DNA of 64,000 nucleotides from Macrostomum lignano (lineage: Eukaryota): assembly GCA_002269645.1 (NCBI GenBank), contig NIVC01001505.1, positions 186,001 through 250,000 of the forward strand. Reading direction: 5' to 3'. The notes beneath the pieces are model-generated. The model was not told the DNA's origin and made no database searches. It saw only the letters and a list, made by a program, of their open reading frames with translations. Shown here one piece after another: positions 2,739-43,735 of this stretch. The position numbers and the translations under genes are program-made. Numbering within the stretch: the stretch's first letter is position 1; the number at the start of each line of letters is the position of its first letter.

Positions 2739-5700
2739 ATGGTAAGGTCTTGTGTGTTCTTCAGTTTTATGGCACGAATCACTGTTGGGATCCACCTATA
2801 CCAGCCCGAAACAGCTATGGTCAGAATCCTGCAGTCTTCTTCACCCCAGTGGAGTCCCCAGTCCCCAGGCGGAAAGTGATAATTAAGTGGGAATAAGCAA
2901 ATTACAGAATCGCATTCACTGTCAAAATAGCTGTTTACAGACATGAACTAGAAAGAAGCGAACGCATTTCTGGCTGTCAGAAATTCAATCAAGCCTCAAA
3001 TCGTTCTGCAGGCGACGACAACCCAGTTGATTGGCAGGGACGTTCTGCTGCCAGAGCAGCCTCGGATCCTGGTTCTGCACGAGCCTCAGCCGCTGCCGAA
3101 GCCGCCGTCGCTGACCATCGAGGAGCAGCCGGCTCGGTTCTACCGATTTCGCTACGAGTCGGAGATCGAGAAGGACAGCGGCAGAGTTGGCGGCCTGCTG
3201 CTCGGCAGGAGCTCCACCGATGGCAACAAGAGCTTCGTGAGAGTTCGCGTCAGCGACATCGACCCAGCTGTGCACTCGCAGCTGCAGCTGACTGTGTGCA
3301 CCGTGAGCGCCGAGGAGAAGGCTCCTCATCCGTACTACCTGCACGGAGACCACTGCAGCAACGGATATTTCCAGCTGAAGAAGACCGTGGACTCAGCTAT
3401 TGGGGGCAGTGAATGGGAGATCACGTGAGCTTCATTGATCTGCTGTTTTTTTTCATTTTTTAGATGCAGGGGGGTTGTGTGCACCCTGGCGCACTTTAAG
3501 CGACATAGGCACACAACCGGCGAGAGGCATTACTGCCCATTCCGCCGACTTCCCTGAGCAGGCATACAAGCGCGCGGATACGCAGGCACACACTCACACA
3601 GGAGTGTACAGCGGCCCTAACTTTATTTTATCGTTAGGCATGTACGCTTCACTGCGCCTTGGGGGGTTGGCTCTCAAGGCTGTTAATTGCACGAGCAGAG
3701 CCAAGCCGAGTTTCCAATTCAGCCCCAAATTAATGTGACTGCACTTGGAATCGAGCCTGGGTCGCTGGCACACCAGAGCAGCTGCGCTACCGCTGGGCTA
3801 CGGCCCCCCTTTGATCTGCTGTTACTCTGAGATGAATTCACAACGCCAATTTCAAAGCCAATCTCAAAGCCAATCTCAAAGCCAATCTCAAAGCCAATCT
3901 CAAAGCCAATGTTAAAGCCAACCTCAAAGCCAATCTCAAAGCCAATCTCAAAGCCAATGTTAAAGCCAATCTCAAAGCCAATCTCAAAGCCAATCTCAAA
4001 ACCAATCTAAAAGCCAATCACATAACCAATCTAAAAGCCAATCACATAACCAATCTAAAAGCCAATCACAAAGCCAATCTCAAAGCCAATCTCAAAGCCA
4101 ATCTCAATGCCAATCATCTCAAAGCCAATCTCAAAGCCAATCTCAAGGCCAATCTCAAAGCCAATCCCGAAGCCAATCTCAAAGCCAATCTCAAAGCCAA
4201 TCTCAAAGCTAATCTCAAAGCCAATCTCAAAGCCAATCACAAAGCCAATCTCAAAGCCAATCCCTAAAACAATTTCAAAGCCAATCTCAATGCCAATCAT
4301 CTCAAAGCCAATCTCAAAGCCAATCACAAAGCCAATCTCAAAGCCAATCCCTAAAACAATCTCAAAGCCAATCTCAATGCCAATCATCTCAAAGCCAATC
4401 TCAAAGCCAATCTCAAGGCCAATCTCAAAGCCAATCCCGAAGCCAATCTCAAAGCCAATCTCAAAGCCAATCTCAAAGCTAATCTCAAAGCCAATCTCAA
4501 AGCCAATCTCAAAGCCAATCTCAAAGCCAATCCCGAAGCACTATCATAGCCATCAGCTACATATCGCATTCGCAAGACCCCCCCCCCCAACACCAATGCA
4601 GCTTCAACCGCCTGGCCGTGATCTGCGTGACCAGGAAAAGTCAGAAGGACATTGAGAGAGCAGTGGAGCTGAGGCGCGCAAATGTCCCCAGTCTGCCTGA
4701 TGGTGAGTCTATTAGTACTATTATTATTGTACTACTTTAAGTAATGTTGCCACTTTTTTTTACTATATTAAAAACTCGCATTTGACTTTGTGTGCAGCAG
4801 TGGAAAGTTCCAAAGTGGAATACACCAGCCGCAGCATGGGTTCGATTCGGCTGGCAATTTCATTGCAATTCACGGACACCAGAGGCATGCACTGGTGGCA
4901 GAGCACGGTGTACAGTGATCCTATTAATGATGACAGTAAGTTCAAGATGGTCTGTGACTCATTGCTGGTCTGGGGTTAAATTTAAGTGATTTGGGATTTG
5001 GGATTTGGTAATTGGGATTTATGGATCTGGGACTCGGTATCTACGCTCGTAGAATTCGAAGTCTAGGACTCATATGTTGGATTCGGGATCTTGGATTCAG
5101 GATCTGGGATTCGAGATCTGGGATTCAGGATATGGGATTCGGGAACTGGGATTCAAGATTTGGGATGCAAGATCTGGGGTTCGGGATCTGGGATTCGAGA
5201 TTTAGGATTCGGGATCTGGGATTCGAGATTTGGGATGCAAGATCTAAAGTTCGGGATCTGGGATTCTGGGGTTCGGGATCTGGGATTCGGGATCTGGGAT
5301 TCTGGGGTTCGGGATCTGGGATTCGGGATCTGGGATTCGGGATCTGGGATTCGAGATTTAGGATTCGGGATCTGGGATTCGAGATTTAGGATGCAAGATC
5401 TAAAGTTCGGGATCTGGGATTCTGGGGTTCGGGATCTGGGATTCTGGGGTTCGGGATCTGGGATTCGGGATCTGGGATTCGGGATCTGGGATTCGGGATC
5501 TGGGATTCGGGATCTGTGTTTCTAAATGTGAGATTTGGGATCTGGAGCTTGTTATCTGGAATTCGGAATGTAGAACTCGGAATCTATGTTCAAGTATATG
5601 CTAAGACTTACGGGAAAATTTCAAAGTTTTTACAAAATATCTGATTTAATTTATTACCTATTAATTGAAAAATTCACCATTCAGAACAGAAGAAATCCAT

Positions 5701-11348: not shown

Positions 11349-13048
11349 GTGATTGGAGGAGACATTCTGCTTCAAGCCGAGCCCCAGATCCTCAGCCTGA
11401 AAGAGCTGCAGCCGCCCTCGCTGACCATCGAGAAGCAGCCGGTTCGGTTCTACCGATTTCGCTACGAGTCGGAGATCGAGAAGGACAGCAGCAGAGTTGG
11501 CGGCCTGCTGCTCGGCAGGAGCTCCACCGATAGCAACAAGAGCTTCGTGAGAGTTCGCGTCAGCGGCATCGACCCAGCTGTGCACTCGCAGCTGCAGCTG
11601 ACTGTGTGCACCGTGAGCGCCGAGGAGAAGGCTCCTCATCCGTACTACCTGCACGGAGACCACTGCAGCAACGGATATTTCCAGCTGAAGAAGCCTGTTG
11701 ACGCATTGAGAGATTCTGGTGGTGAATGGGAGATCGCGTGAGTAAACATTCATGGCTGACATACGGACAGCCAGTTCAATATTCCTCAGCAGCAATATCT
11801 AATGATTGAATTAAAGACTAGATTAGACTAGAAATTTATAGTTTTATTTGCAAAAGTAATAAATGTTATGGAAATTCATGATTGACTCTTCAGCTTTGAG
11901 AGACTGGCTGTCATCTGTGTCCAAAGAAAAACTAAGAAAGACATCGAAAACCGCATGGAAGCCAGACGCAGAAATGTTCCTCAGCTTCCAAATTGTGAGC
12001 ATTTTTCTTTTCATATCGTCTCGTTTCCGCTGTTGGAGTCCAATTTAAGAAGGCTTACATACAAACGTGGCGCTGTTTCAGGTCCCACAGCTCCATCAAC
12101 TCAATACACAACCAAAGACTTTGGTCGCATTCGACTGGCGTTCTCGCTCTCATTCAGCGATATCTTCGGTAGAGGGGGGCAGCTGAGCACTGTGTTCAGC
12201 GACGAGATCGTCAGTGAGAGTGAGTTTCTCAGTTTCGTTCTGTACTCTCAGTCTATATTGGTTATTAATTAATGTGTTTCATCATTTTTTAGGGGAAAAG
12301 AAGACTATTCGGGTTGATTGTCTGAACCCAGCGGAAGTGCCAATGGAGGGCGGCAGCATGCTGGCGATCCACACCGTCACCCCTACAACAGGTGCGCTCG
12401 GTTTCAAAACTATTAAGAATTTATGGAACCAGATATAAGTTGTGAAGCACTGCGCTCATATTTGAATTTCAGGCATTCAGAAGAGTGACTTAAAGGTACA
12501 TTTCAAAATGTTCCCAGTCCTCAATGAAGTCACGGGAAAGAGAACTGAGTTCGTTGCCGACGTCAAAGAAGTTAAAAAGGTAATATACCTATATTCCAGT
12601 ACAGAAAGGAGAATTTCGCCTGACTATTATATGAGGATGTAGTGTTCGCACCATCCTAAATTGGTATAATTTTAAATGTCCTCACATGCATTTAAATATT
12701 TCTAAACAGCTAACTGTTGGAATGCTTTTGACACGTTTGACTTCCAGCACCTACTGCTTGTTAGAACTCCCGATTTGAGGAATGCAATTGTCGGTGACCG
12801 TCAGAAATGTTCGGTTGTTGTTCACAGCCACGGAGGGAAGAGTGAGGAGCTCAACATTTTGTTGGGTCTGTTCAACAGCTCTAAATGGAACCCCGGAACA
12901 CCGCCAAGTACGTACTTGTACCTTTAAGAAAGTTTTAAAGTTGGCAAACTTTTGTTTCTCCCTTCACGAGTTTTTAAATAAATTTTCAAATACACTTTGT
13001 GTTTTTGCAGAGTCCGGAACTGCTGTGAAGAGAGCGCGGCCAAGTTGA
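11349..13048 (+). CDS. Rel-homology-domain protein, copy 2 (start exon not located)
   Basis: Exons 11349-11737, 11894-11994, 12082-12219, 12293-12391, 12473-12579, 12748-12907, 13011-13048 (KSGTAVKRARPS*). All introns GT-AG and the frame is intact (343 codons plus stop). Confidence 0.88.
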
Positions 13049-13647: not shown

Positions 13648-13805
13648 GGTGATGCTGGGTTAATCCCAGTGGTGATGCTGGGTTAATCCCAGTGGTGATG
13701 CTGGGTTAATCCCAGTGGGTGATGCTGGGTTAATCCCAGTGGGTGATGCTGGGTTAATCCTAATGGTGATGCTGATGGAAATCCAAATGGTGATGCTGGG
13801 ACAGT
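13648..13805. repeat. 23-24 bp minisatellite GGTGATGCTGGGTTAATCCCAGT, related to the 8250 and 23071 arrays
   Basis: Direct reading; each unit contains the CTGGG-TTAAT-CCCAG palindrome. Confidence 0.9.
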
Positions 13806-13849
13806 TCCTAATGATCAGTGACAATAATTCTAAATATAGTTACTATATA

Positions 13850-14286
13850 ATGAGGTGAACCAAAAGTCCGTGCGCTTTTTGTATGCACATTTTTAGGCGC
13901 TTATTATTTCTCTCATGAACAACATACATAATCAAGTGACGTCTCATTCGAAAGAGCATATTTTGCCGAACCAAACCACGCATGTTTTAATTCTGGTAAA
14001 TATTTCCAGTCACTGTCAGCTCTACTGAAATGAGTGCTACCAGTCGCGATAATCTCGCTATTCTGCGACATTACTGGAAGCTCGGCTTCACAGCAACGGA
14101 CGCAGCTCAAAAGATTCGCGAAACTGAAGGGCAGGATGCTCTTCAGGACAGAACAGCACAGAAGTGGTACCAGCGCTTTTCGAGTGGCGACACGAGCCTC
14201 GAAGTTCGGCCACGTTCTGGTCGACCTACCGACCTATTCTGTCTATTTTAAGTCAGAAAAACGCACGAACTTTTGGTTCACCCTAA
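13850..14286 (+). mobile_element. Internally deleted mariner (Tc1/mariner) element, 437 bp
   Basis: TIRs ATGAGGTGAACCAAAAGTCCGTGCG and rc TTAGGGTGAACCAAAAGTTCGTGCG, flanked by TA (13848-49, 14287-88). ORF 14030..14251 encodes a mariner N-terminal HTH (..RTAQKWYQRFSSGDTSLEVRPRSGRP). No DDD catalytic domain. Confidence 0.9.
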
Positions 14287-14321
14287 TAGGTTTCACTAAG
14301 CAAAGCCCGTGCGTTCTCTCC

Positions 14322-14332: not shown

Positions 14333-14906
14333 ATGGATTTTTCAGAGACAAACCGTGGGACTGCCAGTTACATTTGTATTTTCACTATACAATGTACGTC
14401 TCAGTGTCTTTGAAGCAAGTTACAGCAGTATTACCTGTCGCTTCAACGGCAAAAAATGAGTTAAGGAGGAAGCTGCATCAGATTCATGTAAGTACTTCCT
14501 TACTCTACTTCACATACTTCTATACTGTACTAACATTACTTCGTACACGACACTTTCAGCGCTTTAAAGCTTTTTTCAGTCAAAAGGAATATCTATCGAA
14601 AAATGGAAACACTGTCTCCACTTTTTGATGGCTATTAGTGGCACTAAAAATTAGTTTTTTAGACTGATCACCAATCCAATACCGATTCGATGAACACATC
14701 AAAACTCAGATAATTTCTGTTCAGTTTAGTTTTGCTATTCGCTTAGTACCTTGTTTTGACGGTTTTTGCCACGGTAGTTCTATGGAATTTCCACGGAGTT
14801 TGCCATAGGCTATTTTTAGAACTGACGAAAAAAACGGCAATTTAAATAGGAACTTTTATAGCTGTAAGCTCTGTAGAAGTAGCATAGCTAGGTCAAACTT
14901 AGGAAC

Positions 14907-15950: not shown

Positions 15951-16804
15951 TTTATTAGTCTTGATGTTCCTGGCTTTGAGTGCGCTTTACCATCTGCACC
16001 GTGCGCTCAGCGGCCCCGTCGGCTTGCTTATAATAGATTGGGGATTCGAGCTTCCGGATCCCGTTAGTCGTAAGCCAGGAGCGCAGCGATAAATTACTTT
16101 CAATTTTTTTACCAACAAAAGGTGAAGAGCTGTTTGATACATGCTGAGATGTGACTTTATGCAGTTAGTTATGCTCAGAGTACATGCGGTTCAGAGACTG
16201 CAGTGAGGCATTGACAGTTTCAAGAGCGTATTCTGCGCTCTTGATGCCTGTAACATCAAGACTGCATTTTGTGTGCCAATGCACTGGCGTACAGGCGGCT
16301 AAAATTAATCCATGGCAGCAGTTCGCCTACCTAGAAAACAAGCAAGCCGTAACTTGTTTGAAATTCCACCTGGCTAAATGTACAGGTCACAATGCAGCAG
16401 CTGCAGATTCATTCGCCAGCTCTGGGGCAGCAACAGCTGGCAGGGGGCTACGCTAAGCATCTGTTGTCCTATGAGCCTGACCGGAACCCAATGATTGCGG
16501 CTACAAGCACGCAAGCGGTGAGCACACGACTCTAAACCCAGTTTTTAGCTAAAATAGATACAATATCTAGAAGTAACTACGAGTGCGATCGGATTTTGTA
16601 ACATTACTCCCACGATATTTTTGTCTTCATTAGTTTTTAAAAAAGGCACCAGTTAGATCAATTCATCTTATCTGCACCTCTCGCTCTGTGAAATAACTCT
16701 TTCCGAAATTGTCAATGCGATTTTAGCTTCTAAATGAAATCGAAGCAAGTGAAGTCGAGTACTGCGAATATTCTGGATCTGTAACAGCTTCAGACGAAAC
16801 TCAG

Positions 16805-18572
16805 GTGATTGGAGGAGACATTCTGCTTCAAGCCGAGCCCCAGCTCCTCAGCCTGAAAGAGCCGCAGCCGCCGTCGCTGACCATCGAGGAGCAGCCGGCT
16901 CGGTTCTACCGATTTCGCTACGAGTCGGAGATCGAGAAGGACAGCAGCAGAGTTGGCGGCCTGCTGCTCGGCAGGAGCTCCACCGATGGCAACAAGAGCT
17001 TCGTGAGAGTTCGCGTAAGCAGCATCGACCAAGCTGTGCACTCGCAGCTGCAGCTGACTGTGTGCACCGTGAGCGCCGAGGAGAAGGCTCCTCATCCGTA
17101 CTACCTGCACGGAGACCACTGCAGCAACGGATATTTCCAGCGGAATAAGTCTGTTGATTCATTGAGAGATTCTGGTGGTGAATGGGAGATCGCGTGAGTA
17201 AAAATTCATGGCTGACACATGAAAGGTCAATTTAATATTTGTTGGCGACAATATTTAATTTATTAATTGTCAGATTTGATGGTACAGTGAGAGTTTTATT
17301 TTCGAATTAAAGTAGTGATACTGCATGATTGACTCTTCAGCTTTGAGCGACTGGCTGTCATCTGTATCATCAGGAAGACTAAGAAAGACATCGAAAACGG
17401 CATGGAAGCCAGACGCAGAAATGTTCCTCAGCTTCCAAATTGTGAGCATTTTGTTCTTCGTGATCCTTTACAAAAACTGCTACTTTCCTTATAAACAGAA
17501 AAAAAATGGAAGCCTCGCTTTTGCTGTTGGAGTCTAATTTAAGAAGGCTTACATACGAACTTGGCGCTATTTTAGGTCTCACAGCTCCATCAACTCAATA
17601 CACAACCAAAAACTTTGGTCGCATTCGACTGGCGTTCTCGCTCTCATTCAGCGATATCTTTGGCAAAGAATGGCAGCTGAGCACTGTGTTCAGCGACCCG
17701 ATCGTCAGTGAGAGTGAGTGTCTTAGTTTCGTTCTGAACTCTCAGTCAAAAATGGTCATTAGTCAATGTGTTTCACCATTTTCAGAGGAAAATAAGACTA
17801 TACAGGTCGATTGTCTGAACCCTGTGGAAGTTCCAAAGGAGGGCGGCAGCATGCTGGCGATCCACACCAGCACCCCTACAACAGGTGCGCTCGGTTTCAA
17901 CGGTATTAAAAACTTTTGATCTGAAATTATCACACAAAATAAATACCGTGATTCCTACTGTTCGAATTTCAGGCATTCAGAAGAGTGACATAAAGATACA
18001 TTTCATTGTCACCAATGAAGCCACGGGAGACCGAACTGAGTTCGTGGTCGATGTCGATGTTGTTAAAAAGGTGATATGCTTATTTTTATCCTCCACCCGT
18101 ATCTAGATACGCTCGTAGTACAGAAGGGAAATTTTGGCCTGACTATTTTATGAAGATGTAGCTTTCGCACCATCCTTAAGTGGTGTAACTTTTAATTCCC
18201 TCACGTGCATTTGCTGTCAGGCCGAGAAGTAGCTGAATTTTAAATGGCTTTAACAACCTTTGACCTCCAGCACCTACTGCATTTGAGGACTCCCGATTTG
18301 AGGCGCACCACTGCAACTGTCAATGAGCGGCAGAAATGTTCGGTTGTTGTCCACAGCCACGGATGGAAGGGTAAAGAGCTCAGCATTAATTTCGTAAGAG
18401 ATCAGGCCAACAGCTCCAAGGGGAACCCCGGAATACCTCCACGTACGTTCTTGTGCATTTGAGAACGTCTAAAATTAATCATTTTGTGCTCGAATATTTA
18501 TTCTTTCACTCAATAAACTCTCGGGTTTTTGCAGAATCTGGGACTTCTCTGAAGAGAGCGCGGTCAAGTTGA
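16805..18572 (+). CDS. Rel-homology-domain protein, copy 3 (start exon not located)
   Basis: Exons 16805-17193, 17341-17441, 17576-17713, 17786-17884, 17973-18070, 18271-18442, 18535-18572 (QSGTSLKRARSS*). Frame intact. Upstream ~16120-16800 is a near-identical duplicate of ~10715-11345. Confidence 0.88.
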
Positions 18573-20255: not shown

Positions 20256-22560
20256 ATGGTGAGTTGCTTCCTGCCAAACTAATAGCTTTAAAAATTTTAA
20301 AGAAACTTTTCCAAGTTGATACTTCTCCTGCCCAAGAGCTAGCTAATTATTTCATGTGATTTCCTAAGACAAGGTCATGCGTTATCCAGACCTCATTTGC
20401 TACATGAAAAAGCTTGACATTTTCTAGGGTTACTGGAATTCAGAAGCTTCACACTGTCAAAGGGTACACTGATCCTCCTTCGCACACTTGTGACAGGCCT
20501 TCAGCTATTGAATTATCAGGATTTATAGCTTTGCTGTGCCACCATGCGATGTACTTTGTACGTATATGCATTTGAAAGGACGATTAGATAGAGCTATCAT
20601 GGTAATAAATGTACACAGGAGGGTTTTTGGTACCCTGGCGCAATGCCGGGCATCAGTTCTTTTTAAGAAGGCAATCCATTAGATCAAGCCATCTTATCTG
20701 CAACTTTGGCTCTGTTAAATATTGCCACCACGTAAAAATAGAAGTTTTGCTGTAAATTTTAATAAAGGTGGGTTATTACCCTGGTCGAAAAACAACACTC
20801 TTTCCGATCTTACCGATTCGATTTTAGCTTCTAAATGAAATCGTAGCAAGTGAAGTGGAGTACTGCGAATATTCTGGATCTGTAGCAGCTTCAGACGAAA
20901 CTCAGGTGAATGGCAGAGACTTTCTGCTTCAAGCGGAGCCCCAGATCCTCAGCCTGAAAGAGCCGCCGCCGCCGTCGCTGACCATCGAGGAGCAGCCGGC
21001 TCGGTTCTACGGATTTCGCTACGAGTCTCAGCAAGCAAGCTACCACCTTGGCCGCCTGCTGCTCGGCAGGAGCTCCACCGATGGCAACAAGAGCTTCATG
21101 AGAGTTCGCGTCAGCGGCATCGACCCAGCTGTGCACTCGCAGCTGCAGCTGACTGTGTGCACCGTGAGCGCCGAGGAGAAGGCTCCTCATCCGTACTACC
21201 TGCACGGAGACCACTGCAGCAACGGATATTTCCAGCTGAATAAGTCTGTTGACGCATTGAGAGATTCTGGTGGAGAATGGGAGATTACGTGAGTAAAAAT
21301 TCATGGCTGACACATGAAAGGTCAATTCAATATTTGATGGCGACAATATTTAATTTATTAATTGTCAGATTTGATCGTACAGTGAGAGTTTTATTTTCGA
21401 ATTAAAGTAGTGATAATGCATGGTTGACTCTTCAGCTTTGAGAGACTGGCTGTCATTTGTGTCATAAGGAAGACTAAGAAAGACATCGAAGACGGCGCAT
21501 GGAAGCCAGACGCAGAAATGTTCCTCGGCTTCCAGATTGTGAGCATTTATCTTTTCATATCGTCTCGTTTTCGCCGTTGAAGTCCAATTTATTGAAGCTG
21601 ACGTACAAACTTGGCGCTGTTTCAGGTCCCACAGCTCCATCAACTCAATACACAACCCAAAACTGGGGTCGCATTCGACTGGCGTTCTCGCTCTCATTCG
21701 TCGATTTCTTTGGTAGAGAAGGGCAGCTGAGCACGGTGTTCAGCGACCCGATCGTCAGTGAGAGTGAGTTTCTCATTTTCGTTCTGAACTGTCAGTCAAT
21801 AATTGTAATTCTTTAATGTGTTTCACAATTTTTAGAGGAATTAAAGCTTATTCAGGTCGATTGTGTGAACCCAGCGGAAGTGCCAAAGGAGGGCGGCAGC
21901 ATGTTGGCGATCCACACCAGCACCCCTACAACAGGTGCGCTCGGTTTCAACACTATTTAATAACTAATTTTCTGCTGAAATTCTCGCACAAAATAAATAC
22001 CGTGATTCCTACTGTTCGAATTTCAGGCATTCAGAAGAAAGACATAAAGGTACATTTCGCTGTCATCAATGAAGCCACGGGAAACCGAACTGAGTTCGTT
22101 GTCGATCTCGTTGAAGTTAAAAAGGTGATATGCTTATCTTTACCCGTATCTAGGTATTACAGAAAGGACTATTTTATGAAGATGTAGCTAGTGTTCATTC
22201 GTTGCTTAAGTTGTGTAATTTTAATTCCTTTTGACACGTTTAATTTCCAGCATCTACTGCTTGTGAGGACTCCCGATCTGAGGCACGCAACTGTCAGTGA
22301 AAGTGAACGGCAGAAATGTTCGGTTGTTGTCCATAGCCATGAATGGAAGAGTGAGGAGCGGAGCATTGTGTTTCTAAGAGATCTGCCCAACAGCTTTAAG
22401 TGGAACACCGGAACACCTCCACGTACGTTATGTTTTTAAGAAAGTTTCAAAGTTACAAACATTTAGTTTTTCCTTTGCGAGTTTTAAAATTTATTTTTCA
22501 ACACACTTTTGGATTGTTGCAGAATCCGGAACTGCTGTGAAGAGAGCGCGGCCAATTTGA
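20256..22560 (+). pseudogene. Rel-homology-domain gene, copy 4: altered DNA-recognition loop and a 2-nt frameshift in the second RHD exon
   Basis: ATG|gtgag at 20256-20258; exons 20906-21288, 21436-21538 (103 nt vs 101 in paralogs; GGCGCATG vs GGCATG), 21626-21763, 21836-21934, 22027-22124, 22251-22422, 22523-22560 (KRARPI*). The loop reads FYGFRYESQQASYHLG. Confidence 0.75.
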
Positions 22561-23070: not shown

Positions 23071-23215
23071 AGATCCCAATAGTGATGCAGGGTTAATTCC
23101 AATGGTGATGCTGATGGAGATCCCTGTGGTGATGCAGGGTTAATTCCAATGGTGATGCTGATGGAGATCCCTGTGGTGATGCAGGGATAATTCCAATAGT
23201 GATGCTGATGGAGAT
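23071..23215. repeat. GGTGATGC-type minisatellite, third member of the family
   Basis: Contains GGGTTAATTCC, GGAGATCCC and GGGATAATTCC units. Confidence 0.85.
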
Positions 23216-23224
23216 AAATTCGCG

Positions 23225-23895
23225 GCCCCGCATGTAAGGTCACAGTGAGGGTGCGTCAGATGGCGCGCCGCAGAGCTTGAGAGCGGAATTCGAAAGTCCG
23301 CCCCGTTGGCAGTGTCGGGTGCCCCTGCGTCGCACAGCAGGCAGTCCACGTTCATGTATCGGCGGGTTTGGGCCTGAGCCTGCCTGAACGGGCCCTGCAA
23401 GATGTGCAGCAAGGCGTCCTGAACAGGTTGGGGGCAGTAGCCCTCGGACTGGATCACGTGGCCCGCAAGTTGAAGTTGCCGATGATGATGGATGATGGAT
23501 GATGGACGGGCGCTGCAGCTGCCCAGAATCCACCTGTAAATTGCACTCGAAATTCTATAAGCTGTACAGAGGTACAGAGCCTCTTTCCCGACGCTCTCGA
23601 CAGCTCGAAAGGCCGCGCGTAGCAGCTGTGATTAGCGTAGCCGTCAGCGTCCACGTCTCGGCTTAGTATGCAGGACGGTTTCGACCACCGCCAGGCCACA
23701 GCCGAGCTCTCTGGCGGTCGGGCAGCGCTTCGGACTGGAGGACGACCCAAATCGAACGGAAGGCCGCCCAGGCAAGTCCTCTGCGCCGTCGGAGGTCCTC
23801 TTTCACGTGGGGCACAAGACCGCCGAGGTAGGTGAACCGCTGGCAGCGTGCGAACGTGGTCGTCTGCCCGTCTGCGCCGCGATTATGTTCGTTGC
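23225..23895 (-). mobile_element. Degenerate 3' fragment of an RTE-like non-LTR retrotransposon reverse transcriptase ORF
   Basis: Minus strand reads FTYLGG..DLRRRRGLAWAAF..VETVL..AETWTLTA..RQLQLAGHVI..CPQPVQD, typical of the region after the RT domain in RTE-clade LINEs. It is interrupted by a 51-bp insert at 23514-23564. Confidence 0.75.
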
Positions 23896-24155
23896 TTCGG
23901 CACTTGTTGTGCACACCAGAATTTAATTCTTACGTCAAATTTATTTATAGAAGTTGAAAGAAGGGACAATGTTTGCTACGAGCGTTCGTGAAAGGCTCGC
24001 AGTGGGGTGCGCTCCTACGGCCACTACACTGCACAATCGTACAAGGTACTTCGCCCTGCTGGCATAAAATGCATTTTGGTACCTTATCCTGACTATCAAG
24101 ATCAACTGCTCTTGAAATCTATTGAATTTGTTTCTTATTGAAATTTACAGACAAG

Positions 24156-26679
24156 ATGGTGAGTTGCTTCCTGCCAATATAATAGCTGGATCAACCAATT
24201 TCCAGGTTGATACTCCACCTGGCCAAGAGCTAGCTAATTGTTTCATGTGATCTAAGACAGGTCATGCATTATCCAGACCTCTTTTTCGACTCGATATTGC
24301 ATAACTGTTCTAGGCTAGGGTTTATGAAATTCAAAAATTCAAAAATGTACTCTTACTCATGACAGGCCTTCAGCTACTTAATTATCAGGATTTATAACTT
24401 ACATGTAGCTGTAGCTGTGCCACCATGTGATGTATATTTGAAGGGACGATTAGATAGAGTTACCAGTGATAATGTCATTAATATTTGCTGGAGTGTTGCG
24501 TGCACCCTGGTACAATGCCTTCGGCATCATCGTCAGTAACAAGTAGGCAAGATTACTTTTTAATGCCGCTGAAACGCATCGATCAATGCTGACGTTTCGA
24601 GATGTAAAAATGGAAAGTTCAAGCCAGCCTCTACTCGTTTTGAAGGCAACGACGACCCAGGTGATTGGCAGAGACTTTCTGCTTCAAGAGGAGCCCCAGA
24701 TCCTCAGCCTGAAGGAGCTGCAGCCGCCGACGCTGACCATCGAGGAGCAGCCGGCTCGGTTCTACCGATATCGCTACGAGTCGGATATCCGTATGGACAG
24801 CGGCAGAGTTGGCGGCCTGCTGCTCGGCAGGAGCTCCACCGATGGCAACAAGAGCTTCGTGAGAGTTCGCGTCAGCGACATCGACCCAGCTGTGCACTCG
24901 CAGCTGCAGCTGACTGTGTGCACCGTGAGCGCCGAGGAGAAGGCTCCTCATCCGTACTACCTGCACGGAGACCACTGCAGCAGCGGATATTTCCAGCTGA
25001 ATAAGTCTGTTGATGCATCGGGAGATTCTGGTGGTGAATGGGAGATCGCGTGAGTAAATAAATTAAGCTAACAACAAGCTTCTAATTAGGGTTTTCGTAA
25101 AGTAGTTGTATAGTCGCTTTTATTTTAGCAATTCTGGTAGTTTCAATTTAAACAAAAAAAAACGAAAACGATTTCTTATTTCTCATCCAGCTTTGACAGA
25201 CTGGCCGTCATCTGCGTGCCAAAGTTAAGGAAAATGGAAATCGAGAAAAGCCTGGAAGACAGACGCAGAAGCTTTCCACAGCATAGAGATTGTGAGCTTT
25301 TTTACCTACTTGCATTGATTATTTAGCTGAGGAATCAATTTTACATGTACGAGCGAATCATGGGTACCATGCAAGCTTCTATCTCACGGATGCAGATTGA
25401 GTACGCTTATAACTTGAAAATCAAAAAATCTTTTTGCGTCGTGACACCATTTATTCCTTTTATAAACTTTGAAAATTTGACAGTGTTGCTCGTTTGGCCT
25501 CCCTTTCGTTAAGACTGTGTGTAAATTAAGAAATCGGAAGTCCTTTTTGGCTGATTTTTGGTCTGCTCTTGGCATTCCTAATTATCAACTAAATATTTCA
25601 ATTTAGATTACTGTGAAAAGTAGCTAAATAAAGATTTGAATCGTAAAATCTCTAACATAGTGTGAAAAATTTCGCCATCATAGATCTTAAATTCCCTTGT
25701 GGCCCATCTTGTGTATACATGATCTTTGGTCGCCATAAAAGAAATGGCAGCATTAAAGAAACGTCTGTGCTCTCTAAGAGTGGTGGGAGATGACGGGGTT
25801 TGACTATTGCTGACTGACGAAAGCAGACAAGCCTCGGTCTCGGTCTTCCTGTGCGAGGCTCGACCCTCCACTTTTTTGTGCCACGTCACATAAGGATGTT
25901 CGTAGAGTTTCTGATCAAAGAGAAATTTTTGCTTGCAACTTTGTGCTGTTCAGGTCCCACAGCCTCATCAACTCAATACATCAGCCAAAACTTGGATCGC
26001 ATTCGTCTGGCGTTCTCGCTCTCATTCAGCGATGTCTTCGGTAGAGAATGGCATCTGAGTACGGTGTTCAGCGACCCGATTGTCGGTGAAAGTGAGTTTC
26101 TCGATTCTGTCTTCAACCCTCAGTTGATGATTTTTTATTAATATCTCGAAATAATTTCAGATCTAAAAAAGAGAATTGAGGTCGATTGTCTGAATCCAAC
26201 GGAAGTACTAATGGGGGATGGCAGCATGCTGGCGATCCACACCGCCACCCCTACAACAGGTGCGCCTTGTTTCGAAGCTATCCAAGATATTTCAGCTACT
26301 TTTACATTGAATTTAATGTTGATCCTTCAAACTAAAATGCTTCTATTGCAGGCATTTGTAGGAGTAACATAAAGGTGCATTTTGCAGTTACCAATAGAGC
26401 CACTGGAAGCCAAACTGAGTTCGTGGCGGACGTCGAGGTAGTTAAGAAGGTAAACGCAAACCCTTTTATATGTTCTGCATTACAGGAGCACTTTTAATAG
26501 TAAAATTAATTTGCTTCCAGCACCTCTTGCTAGTGAGGACGCCCGATGTGAGGAGTTCAGGTTTCAAGGACCGGATGAAATGCGAGGTCACTGTCCAAAG
26601 CGACGGATTCAAAAGCGAGAGCCTCTGTATTGTTTTTCTGCCAGAATCCCGAACTTCTCTGAAGAGCCTGCGACGATAA
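24156..26679 (+). CDS. Rel-homology-domain protein, copy 5 (last intron absent)
   Basis: ATG|gtgag at 24156-24158; exons 24646(or 24661)-25049, 25191-25291, 25954-26091, 26161-26259, 26352-26449, 26521-26679 (..FLPESRTSLKSLRR*). Frame intact. Confidence 0.85.
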
Positions 26680-27079
26680 TGATGACGTAAGCAGCTGACG
26701 TCAAGCTCTTAAATATAAGCGTTGACTTTAATTCAAGACAGTCTTTGATTATGAACATTATGACTCAAGTCTGATATTCAAAGCCTCTATACATGGATCG
26801 TACATGTACAAGCGTCTATGAAAAAATGATGCATAGGATTTTGGTTTCGAATAAGCGAAGTTTATTTAGTATTTAATAATATACTAATTTAGTATGAGTT
26901 AAATATATTGTTTCCATTGCCACTGTGTTGGTGGAAAAGGCGTTTAAACTGCCGGGTTGAAGTGGCTGGCTTTGGTGGGGTACGTGAGTCAGCCTATCTA
27001 GATGTCTTGTTTGCTGCTCAGTTTTTTTCTTTTACTTTTTCCTCCACCGTACAATAGATTCGTCTGCAAGTTTTGGTTC

Positions 27080-27600
27080 ACCTAAAAGTTTTGCTTCCAG
27101 CTACTACTTGTCGTGCTTTCTTTCTTTCCCCGCTGTTCAAAGCACAACTCCATATGTACAAACAGCCCCTGATCTGTGCATCTGTATACTGTACTGTACA
27201 GTGCTATTTCTGTCGGGAAGCTACTTTCGTGTGTACATATCGGGTGTCCGCTTTTTGCCTGTCTCTCTCTCTCTCTGTCTGTCGCTCCGTACAACTTTTG
27301 TTCACGAGAATTCCCCCGGATTTACCGTGGTCCAACCACGGATTAAAATTCGTTTTACTCGTATTATTTTATTTTAGCATGGAGATGGACATTAGTGAAT
27401 CGACTTTGCTGGAACCTACTTTGATGGTGTACATATGTCAGCTTTTTGTCTCTCTCTCTCTCTCTCTCTCCCCGTCTCTGTCTCTCCGTACAACTTTTGT
27501 CCACGAGAATTCCCCCGGATTTACCGTGGTCCAACCACGGATTAAAATCCGTTATATTATTATATTTTAGCATGGAGATGGACACTAGTGAATCGGATCG
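27080..27600. repeat. ~190-bp tandem duplication with CT microsatellite and hairpin; possibly a non-autonomous Helitron-like element
   Basis: Units ~27255-27415 and ~27445-27600, each with CCGTGGT-CCA-ACCACGG. The duplication is seen directly; the Helitron assignment is a guess. Confidence 0.45.
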
Positions 27601-27889
27601 TTTAGGAAAATTTGTTTGTAAAGGACCACTAGGAACACTTCGTTATATTCTAGTAAGTCCTTGTTGTTTGCTTTGATAAATAATCAATGGCCCAGTGGAC
27701 AAACGTAAGTATTGCTTGCTTCTCATTCATTTTGATTTCTTGGCAAAAGTTTTCATTTAAAACTGGTTTTGAAGACGTTTTTTAATGAAGTTTTTAAATT
27801 TTTTACAGGTGTAAATCTTATGTAGCTCTGTGTAAATCTAAAAAAATTAATATTTCCAGTAAACTGTTGAAAGCTATTAACTGAAGTTA

Positions 27890-28330
27890 AAAGTTGAAAG
27901 CTTTAAGTAACTTGACATAGCTCCGGGCATTGGGGGCTCCGGGAGGCCGGATACAGCGGGGAGGCGTTGCAGCCCATTCTGCTGGCTCCTGGCAACCACA
28001 GGTGGTGCCGGTGCCCGCAGCGCGGTCCCCCTCTGGAGAGACCAGGAGGTGGATTGTCGCTCGCCCGGTAGCACTTGGGTAGCGGACAAGCTGGCAGAGA
28101 TTCTCGGGCCTGAAAACGTCGGAGAGGTCCGGGTTTGGCCGAGGTAGGGGAGACTGTCCTGAGTAAAGACGGGGCATTCACAGATGAAGTGCTCCGCATG
28201 CTCAACACCGGAGAGGCAGATCGCTATTCCCTGCAGATAAAGAGGCCCGGCAAAGGAGCCATGGCCTGAAAGGGCCATGGTCACCGCCCTGGTGTCCCTG
28301 TGGTTGAATCTAAAGCAGGGCCGGAGCAAA
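27890..28330 (-). mobile_element. 3' fragment of a non-LTR retrotransposon (CCHC zinc-knuckle region)
   Basis: Minus strand reads [35 protein letters not shown], resembling the LTGHG / C..E..EH..C.CP motif of R1/I-group LINE C-termini. Confidence 0.7.
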
Positions 28331-28482
28331 AAGTAATGTTTTAACTTGACTCTTGTAGATAATACAAATTGATTTTTCGGTAAGGAATCAGAAATGAAAC
28401 TTACTTATTTTGGTTTAGGTTGACAAAAGACATCTAAGTTAAAAACATTAGTTAGCTGCAAGTTCCTTGTAATATGCAGAGA

Positions 28483-28502
28483 GTAAATCCCCGGAAATTC
28501 CC
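28483..28502 (-). promoter_or_regulatory. Paired kB-like sites upstream of RHD copy 6
   Basis: GGAAATTCCC (28493-28502) is the reverse complement of GGGAATTTCC. The adjacent GTAAATCCCC is the reverse complement of GGGGATTTAC. Confidence 0.5.
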
Positions 28503-28845
28503 TGGCCGTGCCAAAAAAGCGCTTTAAAATGAACACACAGGGACTGCACTGAGCTATTTTTAGAAACAGCGTCAGTTAGGAATCTCGTACAGCAAAAGCA
28601 GTGTTATTGCTGCTGGCCTTACATTTGCGTTTTTTCACAGAAAAGAGCAGAAAAGAAGTAGTATTCAATATATTTCTAACTTAGTGGAAGCAGGCAGACC
28701 TGTAGTGGAAGCTGGTTCAAGAATGGAAGCCTCATCCAGAGCGCATTATAATTAGTGGATTATTTCACAAAGCTAAAAAATTAAAATGTGAAATTAGCAA
28801 AGCGTGCATGAAAAACCACAACAACTGCTCTATGAACGTTTCTAG

Positions 28846-31296
28846 TATCAATCGACCTTTTCCGGGCCTCTCGGACCCCCCGTCAACACTGGAATTGCTG
28901 AGCACCTCTACATTGCTGAGTTGCAGCCGCCTTCGCTGACCATCGAGGAGCAGCCGGCTCTGTATCACCGATTTCGCTACGAGTCGGAGATCGAGAAGGA
29001 CAGCGGCAGAGTTGGTGGCCTGCTGCTCGGCAGGAGCTCCACCGATGGCAACAAGAGCTTCATGAGAGTTCGCGTCAGCGACATCGACCCAGCTGTGCAC
29101 TCGCAGCTGCAGCTGACTGTGTGCACCGTGAGCGCCGAGGAGAATGCTCCTCATCCGTACTACCTGCACGGAGACCACTGCAGTAACGGATATTTCCAGC
29201 TGAAGAAGCCTGTTGATGCATTGGATGGTAAAGCAGTTTGGGACATCTGGTGAGTGGCACGAGGAGCGACTGGGCCACGGGAGGGCTGGTTTCCACTGCA
29301 AAATCGTGCTCCCTGAACAGATTTCAGGGACAGGAACAGTTTTCGCCCTGAAGTTTCTAGTGTGTCCCTGCCAGAGACTCAATTGCCCGTTTTTCAGGTA
29401 GATGACCGCTGATTTAGGTAGATCAGCTGCCTATGAGCTAGATGAACCTATCTGGTAAATGGACCGCCTGGAAAGGCATCATGCCTCTGGGGATCCTAAG
29501 CCTAGAAGTGCGTTTACCGCTTGTCGACTGGCTCTCACTTTAGCACGTTGGAGTGAGATCAAATGTTCGCTGCCCTCATGTATAATACATGTTAGGGAGT
29601 TCGTGCTGATCTGGTTGAGCTTGGAAGCCCACGGTCGACCCTGTCTGAGGGGGGGGGGTAGTTTTGCGCCCGCAAGTACACCAAGCTGGACTGACGATGA
29701 GTCAAGCCGTGAAAATAATAAAAGTTGGTACACCCAGCCTCTTCAAGAGCACGCCAAGCTTTAGCTGCTAGCCCTATTTAACAACAAACAGATTTCGCAA
29801 AGATCAGCTTTTTTCATTTACGCTTGGGAAATAGGATTTTACCATAGACAAACTCGTTCGAGAGAAATATTTTTTATACTGACTCGGAAACGATGAAATT
29901 TGTTGTCAGTTATAGCCTATCTACGGTCGTGAATTAGCATTTCATTGGCAATATCAGCATTAGTATATACTGTCAACCCGCCTCTACTTAAAATGAAATG
30001 TTGTTTATCTATTAGAGTGAAGAAACTATTTGCAAAGAGTCAAGGATGCCTCTATGTTCGCTACGCTCCTCGCTTTGTTCCTAAGGAGTGAAGCGAATTG
30101 AACATTGAGGCTTCCTAGGAAGAGTCGCTCCAGTTTAGTTGTACAGGGTTGCTTATAGTGATTTGCAGGCATGCTCGAAGTTTCCCACGCACTTGAATTT
30201 TTCAGCTTCGACAGGCTGTCCGTGATCTGTGTGCCAAAGAAGAACAAAGCGAGCATGGAGAAAGCCATGGAAGCCAGACTCAGGGATGTGCCGACCCCCA
30301 GCGATTGTCCTACAGGGCCGTCAGCTCAGTACACCCAGACCAACTTGGCTCAGATTCGTCTGGCATTCTCGCTCACCTATTGCGATATTTTCTATCGAGA
30401 ATGGCTGCTTAGCACAGTGTTTAGTGACAAGATCGTCAGTGACAGTGAGTTTCTGTGATACTCTGATCGACTCATGTTGTTCTGTTCATGTACAGAATGA
30501 TTCCACAAATGTGTGTTTTAGAGGAAAAGAAGAACATTGACGTCATCGCGTTGAATCCGGCGGAAGCGCCAATGGATGGCGGCTGCACGATCGCCATCCA
30601 CACTAAGGCCTCCACCGCAGGTCTGATCAAGGACCACTAGTAGTAGATGGACGGGGCAGTTAGTGTCTTGAAAAGTTTTAGTAGAAATGGTAGCACTATG
30701 TTCAAAGTTCCAAATGTTTTAGACCCAACGAGGGTATTTGTACGAGAATAATCTATTCTACGAAACGATCGAACGTCGCTATTTGTTTTAGGCCAGGCAC
30801 TCTCAAAATTGACTTAAAATTGCAGGTAAAATATTTTAAACTTTTTAGGAATTCAAAAAGGTCAAGTAAAAGTCCACTTCTCGTGCTTCAACGATATCAA
30901 AAGAGAGCGCGTTGTCTTCGTTAGCGACGTGCACGAACTGAGGAAGGTACGGTCAGTTTGAATAAGGTTTGGGAGTCTGCATAAATTCTGTGCCTACTCA
31001 CTTTTGATGCTTCCAACTGCTGTTCCTCCAGCACATTTTACTCGTGAAATCACCCGACGTCCGGCACGAAACTACAAATGACCGGCTTAAGGCTGAGGTT
31101 AGCGTCCTTAGCAACGGATTCAACAGCAAACTGCTTGACATCGTTTTTTTCCGACAATCTTTTCCACCAAATCTGGGTGAGGACGCAAATATTTGACACT
31201 TTCTAAAATTCAATTCAGTAAATCAATCATTTTTTTCAATTTGCGAGTATTTAAGTTGCAGGAGTCGGGCGTTCTTTGAAGAGGCCTTTAAAGTGA
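28846..31296 (+). CDS. Rel-homology-domain protein, copy 6 (one intron absent; start exon not located)
   Basis: Exons 28846-29249, 30206-30444 (fusion of two paralogous exons), 30522-30620, 30849-30946, 31032-31176, 31262-31296 (GVGRSLKRPLK*). Frame intact. Confidence 0.85.

Positions 31297-33248: not shown

Positions 33249-43735
<10,487 letters not shown>

What the first reader, a model, noticed from the sequence alone, without database searches (positions are those of the whole stretch)
2739..31296. Tandem array of six miniature NF-kB/Relish-like genes
Seen: six co-oriented genes with a shared exon plan encoding RHD (LTIEEQP..RFRYESE, HPxxLHGxxCxxG, FxRLAVICV, IRLAFSL..VFSDPI), an IPT domain and a terminal basic motif; five have intact frames. 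Known: most invertebrates have only a few Rel/NF-kB genes, and NF-kB is generally reported as missing from planarian and parasitic flatworm genomes. Inference: if the host is a flatworm such as Macrostomum, this is a lineage-specific NF-kB-like expansion in a phylum thought to have lost it. With the kB sites, the diversified recognition loops and the adjacent glycine-zipper gene, it may form an undescribed self-regulating immune/stress module. This is the best candidate system in the window.
Basis: partly seen in the sequence, partly recalled or inferred. Interest (0 to 1): 0.9.

Follow-up and report, generated by a model that had tools for sequence, protein, structure and literature searches.

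The report
Six tandem mini-Rel genes, Macrostomum lignano
A flatworm (Macrostomum lignano) contig carries six tandem, diverged copies of a very short Rel/NF-kB-type transcription factor gene, five with open frames, showing that this flatworm kept and expanded a stripped-down branch of a family often reported missing from the phylum.

Summary
The window is Macrostomum lignano contig NIVC01001505.1. It carries six co-oriented genes (2739-31296, + strand) with one shared exon plan. Each encodes a Rel homology domain (Pfam RHD_DNA_bind, 45-61 bits against a cutoff of 27), an IPT-fold second domain, and a C-terminal KRAR/KRPR basic motif where Rel proteins have their nuclear localisation signal. 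Five frames are open. Copy 4 has a 2-bp insertion.

The proteins are not Relish/p105-like, because they have no ankyrin repeats. By sequence and by predicted fold they sit nearest RelA/RelB/c-Rel/Dorsal, then p50/p52, then NFAT. They end at the basic motif, so they lack a C-terminal activation domain.

All M. lignano RHD proteins form one clade (96/100 bootstraps). That clade includes a second tandem family and two further versions of this array on other contigs.

One new point: an 89-codon stretch holding the DNA-recognition loop has almost no synonymous divergence among the six copies (dS 0-0.1), while the rest of the genes have dS from 0.2 to saturation. Its GC3 is 0.8 against 0.54. This indicates gene conversion.

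The kB-site excess is mostly one minisatellite. The proposed "self-regulating immune module" has no support. Planarian divergent RHD genes were already reported in 2026.

The parts
2739..7838 (+). c1, a mini-Rel gene (359 aa). Exons: 2739-2741 (ATG only), 3012-3424, 4602-4702, 4798-4935, 5685-5783, 6523-6656 (GC-AG intron follows), 6743-6893, 7798-7838. Four introns are swollen by minisatellites.
   Evidence: It is 99.7% identical to P0007 (Mlig011721g1, a homeolog). A 359-aa RHD gene is called at this place on the contig. Pfam RHD_DNA_bind 59.3 bits.
10935..13048 (+). c2, an intact mini-Rel gene (411 aa, 8 exons) with a Gln-rich/acidic N-terminal extension. No gene is called here on this contig.
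   Evidence: Pfam RHD_DNA_bind 54.7 bits. No gene call at this position in L002.
16392..18572 (+). c3, an intact mini-Rel gene (412 aa, 8 exons), equal to BOX15_Mlig025746g1. The GenBank model adds a doubtful extra 5' exon at 14392-14493.
   Evidence: 100% identical to P0001 over 412 aa.. Pfam RHD_DNA_bind 54.2 bits.
20256..22560 (+). c4, a mini-Rel copy whose frame is broken by a 2-nt 'GC' insertion at 21497-21498. Its recognition loop is diverged (GFRYESQ, with a 2-codon deletion). Its 5' end is a hybrid: a c5-type ATG mini-exon (20256-20258) joined to a c2/c3-type body that starts at 20828.
   Evidence: The insertion is absent from the ten other copies of this exon in the window and in the homeologous contigs.
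24156..26679 (+). c5, an intact mini-Rel gene (333 aa). It has an ATG-only mini-exon at 24156-24158 and has lost the last intron. Its loop variant is RYRYESD. No gene is called here on this contig.
   Evidence: 95.5% identical to P0006 (Mlig012767g1, a homeolog). Pfam 55.9 bits.
28924..31296 (+). c6, a mini-Rel gene with an open frame (about 313 aa). The 101- and 138-nt exons are fused by intron loss (30206-30444). The start codon is not identified. No gene is called here in the stretch seen (L002, which ends at window 28572).
   Evidence: 98.6% identical to the fragment P0008. Pfam 60.7 bits.
3108..3374 (+). The homogenised 89-codon core (SLTIEEQP...GYFQ) holding the DNA-recognition loop, read here as a gene-conversion tract. 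The same tract lies at 11418-11684, 16874-17140, 20975-21235, 24730-24996 and 28933-29199.
   Evidence: Core dS is 0-0.11 in all 15 pairs, against 0.2 to saturation in the rest of the same genes. Core GC3 is 0.76-0.81 against 0.51-0.60. Nucleotide identity is 92-98% in the core and 52-87% in the rest. Coordinates.

Best explanation
The region is a tandem array of six paralogous genes of Macrostomum lignano. Each encodes a minimal Rel-type transcription factor: a complete Rel homology domain (an N-terminal DNA-binding subdomain plus a C-terminal IPT dimerisation subdomain), followed about 60 residues later by a short basic motif at the position of the Rel nuclear localisation signal. There are no ankyrin repeats and no C-terminal activation domain.

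The array grew by DNA-level tandem duplications of very different ages. c1 and c6 are old, c5 is intermediate, and c2/c3/c4 are recent. Afterwards, gene conversion kept an 89-codon stretch nearly identical in all copies. That stretch carries the recognition loop R-F-R-Y-E-S-E. The rest of each gene, above all the dimerisation subdomain, kept diverging.

Inferred mechanism: the proteins enter the nucleus through the C-terminal basic motif and bind kB-like DNA as homo- or heterodimers using a shared recognition module. Because their dimerisation surfaces have diverged, they differ in which partners they pair with. Because they lack an activation domain, they most likely act as partner or modulator subunits, much as p50 does, for example together with the second M. 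lignano RHD family, which keeps a short acidic tail after its NLS.

Shown here: gene structures, domain identity, predicted fold, nearest relatives, the conversion signature, and transcript-based models for c1 and c3. Inferred only: DNA binding, dimerisation, nuclear import, and any role in immunity or stress.
For: Gene models and shared exon plan.

Host and contig.

Domain identity: RHD_DNA_bind sits above the Pfam cutoff across the whole profile in all six copies.

Sequence neighbours: the best PDB sequence matches are c-Rel, RelB, p65 and Gambif1 at E 1e-10 to 1e-3, with no p50, p52 or NFAT even at E<=10.

Fold: the AlphaFold model has mean pLDDT 81.9. Foldseek ranks RelA (8e-21) above RelB/c-Rel, then p50/p52 (1e-18 to 1e-17), then NFAT1 (1e-15), then TonEBP (1e-12).

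Library hits: named non-Macrostomum hits are RelB, c-Rel and Dorsal types. 76 of 93 aligned proteins have RHD_dimer and only 2 of 93 have ankyrin repeats.

Key residues: R-x-R-Y-x-x-E is kept in c1, c2, c3 and c6, and a basic residue is kept at the linker contact position in 5 of 6 copies.

Conversion.

Constraint: the frames of c1 and c6 are open although dS against the other copies is 1.1 or higher, up to saturated, with dN 0.38-0.57.

Transcription: the GenBank annotation of this assembly is built only from RNA-seq assemblies, and it includes c1 and c3 on this contig and the c1-, c2/c3- and c5-type genes on the homeologous contigs.

Family B proteins end with KRKRP plus an acidic tail.
Against: No experiment on DNA binding, dimerisation or localisation exists for any of these proteins.

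Pfam RHD_dimer is not reached by sequence (best 12.7 bits against a cutoff of 28.3), so the second domain rests on a predicted structure whose alignment contained canonical Rel proteins.

dN/dS outside the core is high among the recent copies (about 0.5-0.6), which fits relaxed constraint as well as diversification.

c4 is frameshifted and two of its loop contact residues are changed.

c6 has no identified start codon.

c2, c4, c5 and c6 have no gene model on this contig, and RNA-seq reads may multi-map between homeologs, so expression of each copy is not shown.

The near-zero dS in the core could in principle reflect nucleotide-level constraint, since an antisense ORF spans it.

The class II placement lies on a long branch in a neighbour-joining tree that has no NFAT outgroup and only two class I (ankyrin-repeat) sequences.
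Confidence: 0.7

Rival explanations
1. The genes are Relish/p105-type (class I) NF-kB genes. On this view they are miniature versions whose inhibitory ankyrin domain is encoded elsewhere or has been lost.
For: Ser replaces the usual Cys at position 6 of the recognition loop, as it does in insect Relish. Like processed p50, the proteins lack an activation domain.
Against: No ankyrin repeats or glycine-rich region are present; each reading frame stops just after the basic motif. p50 and p52 chains are missing from PDB sequence hits even at E<=10, while RelB/c-Rel/p65/Gambif1 are found. Foldseek ranks p50/p52 below RelA/RelB/c-Rel. Only 2 of 93 library relatives carry ankyrin repeats.
Confidence: 0.05
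2. The array is mostly evolutionary debris. On this view the copies are recent, redundant duplicates drifting towards pseudogenes in a polyploid genome, and they have no distinct function.
For: c4 is frameshifted. dN/dS outside the core is about 0.5-0.6 among c2, c3 and c4. M. lignano is a hidden polyploid with many redundant genes. Four of the six copies have no gene model on this contig.
Against: c1 and c6 keep open frames of 313-359 codons and all splice sites, although their synonymous divergence from the other copies is 1.1 or higher, up to saturated. Every exon keeps its phase. The same copy types recur on the two homeologous contigs, though the number and arrangement of the middle copies differ. 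The c1, c3, c5 and c2/c3-type genes have RNA-seq-derived models. The c4 insertion is private to this contig and could be an assembly error.
Confidence: 0.12
3. The near-identity of the 89-codon core comes from constraint on the nucleotide sequence itself rather than from gene conversion. Candidates for that constraint are the conserved antisense ORF or transcript, an RNA structure, or extreme codon selection.
For: A minus-strand ORF of 109-205 aa spans the core in all six copies. GC3 of 0.8 could reflect codon preference.
Against: Identity drops sharply at both ends of the tract within one exon. dN is about equal to dS inside the core, which is not the pattern expected from extra constraint on silent sites alone. 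High GC3 confined to the tract is the usual mark of GC-biased conversion. Antisense ORFs arise readily in GC3-rich coding sequence.
Confidence: 0.1
4. The array, nearby kB sites and the upstream glycine-zipper-like gene form a self-regulating immune or stress module.
For: Consensus-type kB motifs lie upstream of c1 (GGGATTTTCC at 2334, GGGACATTCC at 2483) and of c6 (GGGAATTTCC at 28493). The motif count is 32 against 9.2 expected.
Against: Fourteen of the 32 matches are the two strands of seven palindromic GGGAGATCCC units in one 22-bp-period minisatellite at 8266-8712. Others lie in repeated elements or in coding sequence. c4 and c5 have no site anywhere upstream; the nearest sites to c2 and c3 lie 1.3 and 2 kb upstream. 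The DNA specificity of these proteins is unknown. The upstream ORF has no detectable link to the array. M. lignano has no Toll-like receptors.
Confidence: 0.1

Closest known systems
Class II Rel proteins (RelA/p65, RelB, c-Rel; insect Dorsal/Dif/Gambif1)
   Same: Two-subdomain Rel homology domain. Recognition loop R-x-R-Y-x-x-E. A basic motif at the C-terminal edge of the RHD, where the NLS lies. These are the best sequence matches (E about 1e-10) and the best fold matches (Foldseek 8e-21).
   Different: Only 20-24% identity to the solved chains. No C-terminal activation domain: the proteins stop at the basic motif. A 5-residue insertion in the recognition loop, with Ser in place of Cys. The dimerisation subdomain is too diverged to reach the Pfam RHD_dimer cutoff. 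The genes are organised as multi-copy tandem arrays.
Class I NF-kB (p105/p50, p100/p52, insect Relish)
   Same: The mature p50/p52 forms are also RHD-only and lack an activation domain. Insect Relish also has Ser at loop position 6.
   Different: No ankyrin-repeat inhibitory domain, no glycine-rich region and no death domain. Sequence similarity to p50/p52 is weaker than to Rel proteins.
Divergent RHD transcription factors of the planarian Schmidtea mediterranea (seven genes; Development 2026, PMC13563047)
   Same: Flatworm RHD genes on long branches, hard to assign to NF-kB classes, in animals that lack Toll-like receptors.
   Different: No sequence-level link could be tested here. No planarian protein turned up among the roughly 40 hits whose source was identified in the searches, and about 60 weaker hits were not identified. 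Tandem arrays and concerted evolution are not mentioned in the passages of that paper read here.
NFAT / NFAT5 (TonEBP)
   Same: The same RHD-plus-IPT fold (Foldseek 1e-15 to 1e-12).
   Different: The loop is RFRY, not the NFAT-type RAHYETEG (from general knowledge). No NFAT chain appears in the PDB sequence searches. NFAT ranks below all Rel/NF-kB chains by fold.

Membership tests
Rel homology domain superfamily | N-terminal RHD DNA-binding subdomain (Pfam PF00554) above the curated cutoff | tested here: met
   44.8-60.7 bits against a cutoff of 27, covering profile positions 1-166/169 or more, in all six copies.
Rel homology domain superfamily | C-terminal IPT/dimerisation subdomain recognised by sequence (Pfam PF16179 RHD_dimer) | tested here: not met
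   Best score 12.7 bits (c4) against a cutoff of 28.3; no hit for the other copies.
Rel homology domain superfamily | C-terminal IPT/dimerisation subdomain recognised by fold | tested here: met
   In the AlphaFold model, residues about 265-373 have pLDDT 77-97. Foldseek matches isolated p50, RelB and NFAT1 dimerisation domains at TM 0.74-0.80. Caveat: this is a predicted structure, not a solved one.
Rel homology domain superfamily | Recognition loop R-x-R-Y-x-C-E | tested here: met
   RFRYESE in c1, c2, c3 and c6. RYRYESD in c5. GFRYESQ in c4. Cys is replaced by Ser in all six.
Rel homology domain superfamily | Sequence-specific kB DNA binding as a dimer, and nuclear import through the basic motif | not testable with these tools
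   Only the presence and position of the KRAR/KRPR motif could be checked.
Class I NF-kB (p105/p100/Relish) | C-terminal ankyrin-repeat (IkB-like) domain | tested here: not met
   No ankyrin Pfam hit, and a stop codon follows within 3-6 residues of the basic motif.
Class I NF-kB (p105/p100/Relish) | Closest similarity to p50/p52/Relish RHDs | tested here: not met
   p50 and p52 chains are absent from PDB sequence hits at E<=10 and rank lower in Foldseek.
Class II Rel (RelA/RelB/c-Rel/Dorsal) | Closest similarity to Rel/Dorsal RHDs | tested here: met
   In the neighbour-joining tree the clade nests among Rel/Dorsal sequences when rooted on a p100-like protein.
Class II Rel (RelA/RelB/c-Rel/Dorsal) | C-terminal transactivation domain after the NLS | tested here: not met
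   The window proteins end at the basic motif. The second M. lignano family keeps a short acidic tail.
NFAT | NFAT-type RHD (best matches to NFAT chains; calcineurin-regulated N-terminal region) | tested here: not met
   No NFAT chain in the PDB sequence searches. NFAT ranks below all NF-kB/Rel chains in Foldseek.

The most novel reading that the evidence does not exclude
Macrostomum lignano has no Toll-like receptors and, in the searches made here, no canonical NF-kB. It may run a private network of minimal Rel proteins. In that network, gene conversion holds one DNA-recognition module constant across a tandem array, while the dimerisation subdomains diversify. The result would be a combinatorial set of dimers made of activator-less array members and tail-bearing family B members, tuning stress, wound or microbe-responsive transcription. 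This would be a so-far undescribed way of building a Rel signalling system.
Probability: 0.2. Interest if true: 0.75.

Novelty: new variant of a known kind. Interest (0 to 1): 0.55.

Why it matters
Large surveys list Platyhelminthes as lacking NF-kB family members (PMC11432056). Flatworms also lack Toll-like receptors (PMC8609888). Planarian RHD genes have only just been noted as divergent and of unclear function (PMC13563047).

An early-branching flatworm lineage (Macrostomorpha) with roughly two dozen RHD sequence clusters shows that the family was remodelled in this phylum rather than simply lost. These clusters are organised in at least two tandem families.

The array is also a clean natural case of domain-level concerted evolution: the DNA-reading part is homogenised while the partner-choosing part diverges. 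M. lignano has working RNAi and transgenesis, so the function of these genes in immunity, regeneration or stress can be tested directly.

Tried and rejected
1. I first thought the Met of the c1 and c5 proteins came from the spliced leader, which ends in ATG. I rejected this after finding cis mini-exons that end in ATG|GT at 2739 and 24156.

2. A structure prediction from the shallow 7-sequence alignment gave a poor model (pLDDT 41). It was replaced by a 93-sequence alignment.

3. The six copies are not assembly or haplotype duplicates of each other. They share 60-85% aa identity and differ in intron sizes and intron losses.

4. NFAT affinity was rejected.

5. Searches for relatives in other flatworms found none among the hits whose source was identified. 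These were a profile search of 1.84 billion representatives and two word-indexed searches. Apart from one environmental metatranscriptome protein, P0151 (E 3.5e-21), the best non-Macrostomum hit is a fish RelB-like protein at E 7.9e-11. About 60 weaker hits were never identified.

6. Literature searches for Macrostomum combined with NF-kB, Rel homology, RHD or the locus tags found no description of these genes. Expression tables held for Brand et al. 2020 were truncated and listed only the family B genes Mlig000125.g1/g2, classed as 'Non-Specific' by body region.

7. The kB-site enrichment collapses once the minisatellite and palindromic double-counting are removed.

8. No start codon or upstream mini-exon could be found for c6.

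Full report
**What is there.**

ORF listing showed the same RHD-like exon (LTIEEQP..RFRYESE..HPYYLHGDHCSNGYFQ) six times on the + strand. I aligned database relatives to the window with tblastn.

This gave six gene models:
- c1: 2739-7838
- c2: 10935-13048
- c3: 16392-18572
- c4: 20256-22560
- c5: 24156-26679
- c6: about 28924-31296

The finding's limits are exact. Position 2739 is the ATG of a one-codon first exon of c1 (ATG|GTAAGG). Position 31296 is the stop codon of c6.

The exon plan is shared:
- a large exon of 404-467 nt (326 nt as modelled in c6);
- then 101, 138 and 99 nt;
- then 98 nt (107 in c2, 134 in c1), 151-172 nt, and 38-42 nt.

All splice phases are kept. There are a few departures from the plan:
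- c1 has one GC-AG intron.
- c6 has fused the 101- and 138-nt exons.
- c5 has lost the last intron.
- c2 and c3 have an extra 126-nt first coding exon (MQQLQIHSPALGQQ...).
- c1, c5 and apparently c4 start from a mini-exon that ends in ATG.

Five frames are open. c4 has a 2-nt 'GC' insertion at 21497-21498. The ten other copies of that exon, in the window and in the homeologous contigs, all lack it. It is therefore either a private mutation or an assembly error. I could not find a start codon for c6.

**Whose genome.**

c3 is 100% identical to GenBank protein BOX15_Mlig025746g1. The window matches NIVC01001505.1 of the Macrostomum lignano Mlig_3_7 assembly at 100% over 24,181 bp.

On this contig only c1 and c3 have gene models in the stretch examined.

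Two other contigs, NIVC01000475.1 and NIVC01000109.1, carry further versions of the array:
- NIVC01000475.1 carries seven core copies. Six were found in the two stretches of NIVC01000109.1 that were read.
- They are 95-98% identical to the window in most of the longer matching stretches.
- The arrangement of the middle copies differs.

This fits the known hidden polyploidy and assembly redundancy of this species.

The six window copies themselves are 60-85% identical in protein. They are real paralogs, not duplicates made by the assembler.

**What the proteins are.**

All six hit Pfam RHD_DNA_bind over the whole profile, at 44.8-60.7 bits against a cutoff of 27. Pfam RHD_dimer is not reached.

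A structure predicted from a 93-sequence alignment has mean pLDDT 81.9, mostly above 90 across residues 71-375. It shows two beta-rich domains.

Foldseek against the PDB ranks the matches as follows:
- RelA: 8e-21
- RelB and c-Rel: 6e-20 to 6e-18
- p50 and p52: about 1e-18 to 1e-17
- NFAT1: 1e-15
- TonEBP: 1e-12

The second domain alone matches isolated dimerisation domains at TM 0.74-0.80.

Sequence searches of the PDB find only RelB, c-Rel, p65 and the Dorsal homologue Gambif1. This holds for a single sequence and for a profile. No p50, p52 or NFAT chain appears even at E<=10.

**The recognition loop.**

In the alignments, the loop reads R-F-R-Y-E-S-E in c1, c2, c3 and c6. The Arg, Arg, Tyr and Glu of the canonical R-x-R-Y-x-C-E are kept. 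The Cys is replaced by Ser, and there is a five-residue insertion after the Glu.

Ser at that position is otherwise typical of insect Relish. Cys-to-Ser changes raise DNA binding and remove thiol sensitivity in other Rel proteins (PMC2751831).

**The C-terminal basic motif.**

About 60 residues after the 'HLLxVRTPD' strand, each protein ends in a basic motif: KRARPS, KRARSS, KRARPI, KRPRQQT, LKRPLK or KSLRR. This is the place where the consensus of canonical Rel proteins has its KRxR motif.

There are no ankyrin repeats and nothing follows the basic motif.

These are therefore bare 'RHD plus NLS' proteins. They are closest to the Rel/Dorsal class. They are not Relish/p105-like and not NFAT-like.

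**How far the family extends.**

I ran a profile search of 1.84 billion representative proteins. It gave 101 hits at E<=0.001. Every hit I identified with E between 1e-234 and 5e-11 is M. lignano. The next hits are RelB-like, c-Rel-like and Dorsal-like proteins of vertebrates and arthropods, at E of 8e-11 or weaker.

M. lignano also has a second mini-RHD family: Mlig000125g1/g2, Mlig028098 and Mlig020664. Consecutive accession numbers on three contigs suggest that these too are tandem. They are about 30% identical to the window family. Their members carry a KRKRP-type motif followed by a short acidic tail such as DLSDLLTSF or EEDFMAFL.

In a neighbour-joining tree of 98 sequences over 312 columns:
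- all M. lignano RHD proteins are monophyletic (96/100 bootstraps);
- the window family is monophyletic (100/100);
- the clade sits on a long branch among Rel/Dorsal sequences;
- it is next to a bivalve protein that shares the RFRYxSE loop (78/100).

An environmental metatranscriptome protein, P0151, shares the same loop style.

**The unexpected feature.**

In self-comparison, the first large exon is 84-96% identical in nucleotides between all copies. The rest of c1 and c6 is barely alignable to the other copies.

Nei-Gojobori estimates on a codon alignment make this sharper:

| | 89-codon core (SLTIEEQP...GYFQ) | Rest of the same genes |
|---|---|---|
| dS, all 15 pairs | 0.00-0.11 | see next rows |
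| dS, c2/c3/c4 | | about 0.2 |
| dS, against c5 | | about 0.45 |
| dS, against c6 | | 1.1-1.45 |
| dS, against c1 | | saturated |
| GC3 | 0.76-0.81 | 0.51-0.60 |

Identity falls off on both sides of the core within the same exon.

This is the signature of repeated, GC-biased gene conversion confined to the part of the gene that encodes the recognition loop and the first beta-sheets of the DNA-binding subdomain. The few differences inside the core cluster in the loop of c4 and c5.

So 'diversified recognition loops' holds only for those two copies. The dominant pattern is homogenisation.

**Expression.**

The GenBank annotation of Mlig_3_7 was built only from RNA-seq-derived transcript assemblies, and transcripts overlapping repeat annotations were removed (PMC5730564). 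The models for c1 and c3 here therefore imply transcripts, as do those for the c1-, c2/c3- and c5-type genes on the homeologous contigs. Features such as a GC-AG intron and an ATG-only first exon fit that origin.

Copy-specific expression is not shown, because reads can multi-map between homeologs. In held supplementary tables, two family B genes are expressed at low levels without regional specificity.

GGGRNNYYCC occurs 32 times against 9.2 expected. Fourteen of those matches are the two strands of seven palindromic GGGAGATCCC units in a 22-bp-period minisatellite at 8266-8712. Several more lie in repeated elements or in coding sequence.

Consensus-type sites do lie upstream of c1 (2334, 2483) and of c6 (28493). 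c4 and c5 have none upstream, and the nearest sites to c2 and c3 are 1.3 and 2 kb upstream.

The 'glycine-zipper' ORF at 328-~940 is simply the neighbouring gene. Nothing ties it to the array.

**Known or new.**

- A broad survey lists no NF-kB family member for Platyhelminthes.
- Toll-like receptors are absent from M. lignano.
- A 2026 paper reports seven divergent RHD genes and a conserved NFAT5 in Schmidtea.
- No paper in the searchable library mentions these M. lignano genes.
- The proteins are nonetheless public, labelled automatically as 'RHD domain-containing'.

I rate the finding as a new variant of a known kind. It is a lineage-specific, tandemly expanded family of minimal Rel-type factors that lack an activation domain, with domain-level concerted evolution.

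**Most likely mechanism.**

Most of this is inferred. The proteins would be imported into the nucleus through the C-terminal basic motif. They would bind kB-like DNA as dimers using a recognition module kept uniform by conversion. Partner choice would differ between copies because the dimerisation subdomain has diverged. Their role would be that of modulating or partner subunits, as with p50, possibly together with the tail-bearing family B proteins.

The main alternative is that most copies are redundant and drifting. Arguing against this, c1 and c6 keep open frames and intact splice sites despite high to saturated silent divergence.

Noticed in passing
window 3841-4532, 5079-5545, 5865-6485, 6986-7695: Four introns of c1 are swollen by minisatellites with periods of 12, 14/35/156, 20 and 15 bp and 30-57 copies each. 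This makes c1 5.1 kb long, against about 2.2 kb for its paralogs.
   Followed up: partly
window 8266-8712: A minisatellite with a 22/88-bp period lies between c1 and c2. Its unit contains the palindrome GGGAGATCCC, which fits the kB consensus. It accounts for 14 of the 32 motif matches in the window.
   Followed up: partly
window 2985-3353, 11334-11795, 16790-17119, 20891-21346, 24631-24975, 28765-29382 (minus strand): A long antisense ORF (109-205 aa) spans the homogenised core in all six copies. It is probably a by-product of GC3-rich coding sequence, but it coincides with the stretch that has almost no silent divergence.
   Followed up: no
window 14030-14251 and 14392-14493: A mariner/Mos1-type transposase HTH remnant (Pfam HTH_48, 45 bits) lies between c2 and c3. 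The GenBank model of c3 (P0001) takes an extra 34-codon first exon from just beside it, which looks spurious.
   Followed up: partly
window 8877-9550 and 31767-32489: Copies of a repeated element with internal inverted repeats flank the array region. Both carry a palindromic kB-like site (GGGGAATTCCCC at 9587, GGGGAGTTCC at 32511) just beside them.
   Followed up: no
window 23341-23917 (minus-strand ORFs); proteins P0009 and P0005: UniProt models from the older assembly fuse neighbouring array members (c4+c5, or two copies). They read through intergenic repeat sequence or in a shifted frame, so public protein counts for this family are unreliable.
   Followed up: partly
window 35674-43735, minus strand: A family C GPCR (metabotropic glutamate receptor-like) gene lies downstream of the array. 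It shows seven-transmembrane and ligand-binding-domain ORFs, with a (CTGT)n-type microsatellite in an intron at about 37530-38306.
   Followed up: no
window 328-~940, plus strand: A small gene upstream of c1 encodes a Gly/Ala-rich 'glycine-zipper-like' segment (LGTAAAIGAVVATGGAA). The homeolog has a 197-aa gene model with no Pfam hit.
   Followed up: no
L006 (JGI 3300019040, Ga0192857_10001084) and protein P0090 (bivalve Potamilus): An environmental metatranscriptome protein (499 aa, E 3.5e-21 to the M. lignano profile) and a bivalve RHD protein share the RFRYxSE loop with Ser at position 6. This hints at a wider, poorly described divergent RHD lineage in other invertebrates.
   Followed up: partly
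proteins P0011, P0013, P0018, P0020 (contigs of 986 kb, 1.11 Mb and 439 kb): There is a second family of mini-RHD genes in M. lignano. Consecutive accession numbers on three homeologous contigs suggest that it is also tandem. Each protein has a KRKRP-type NLS followed by a short acidic tail.
   Followed up: partly
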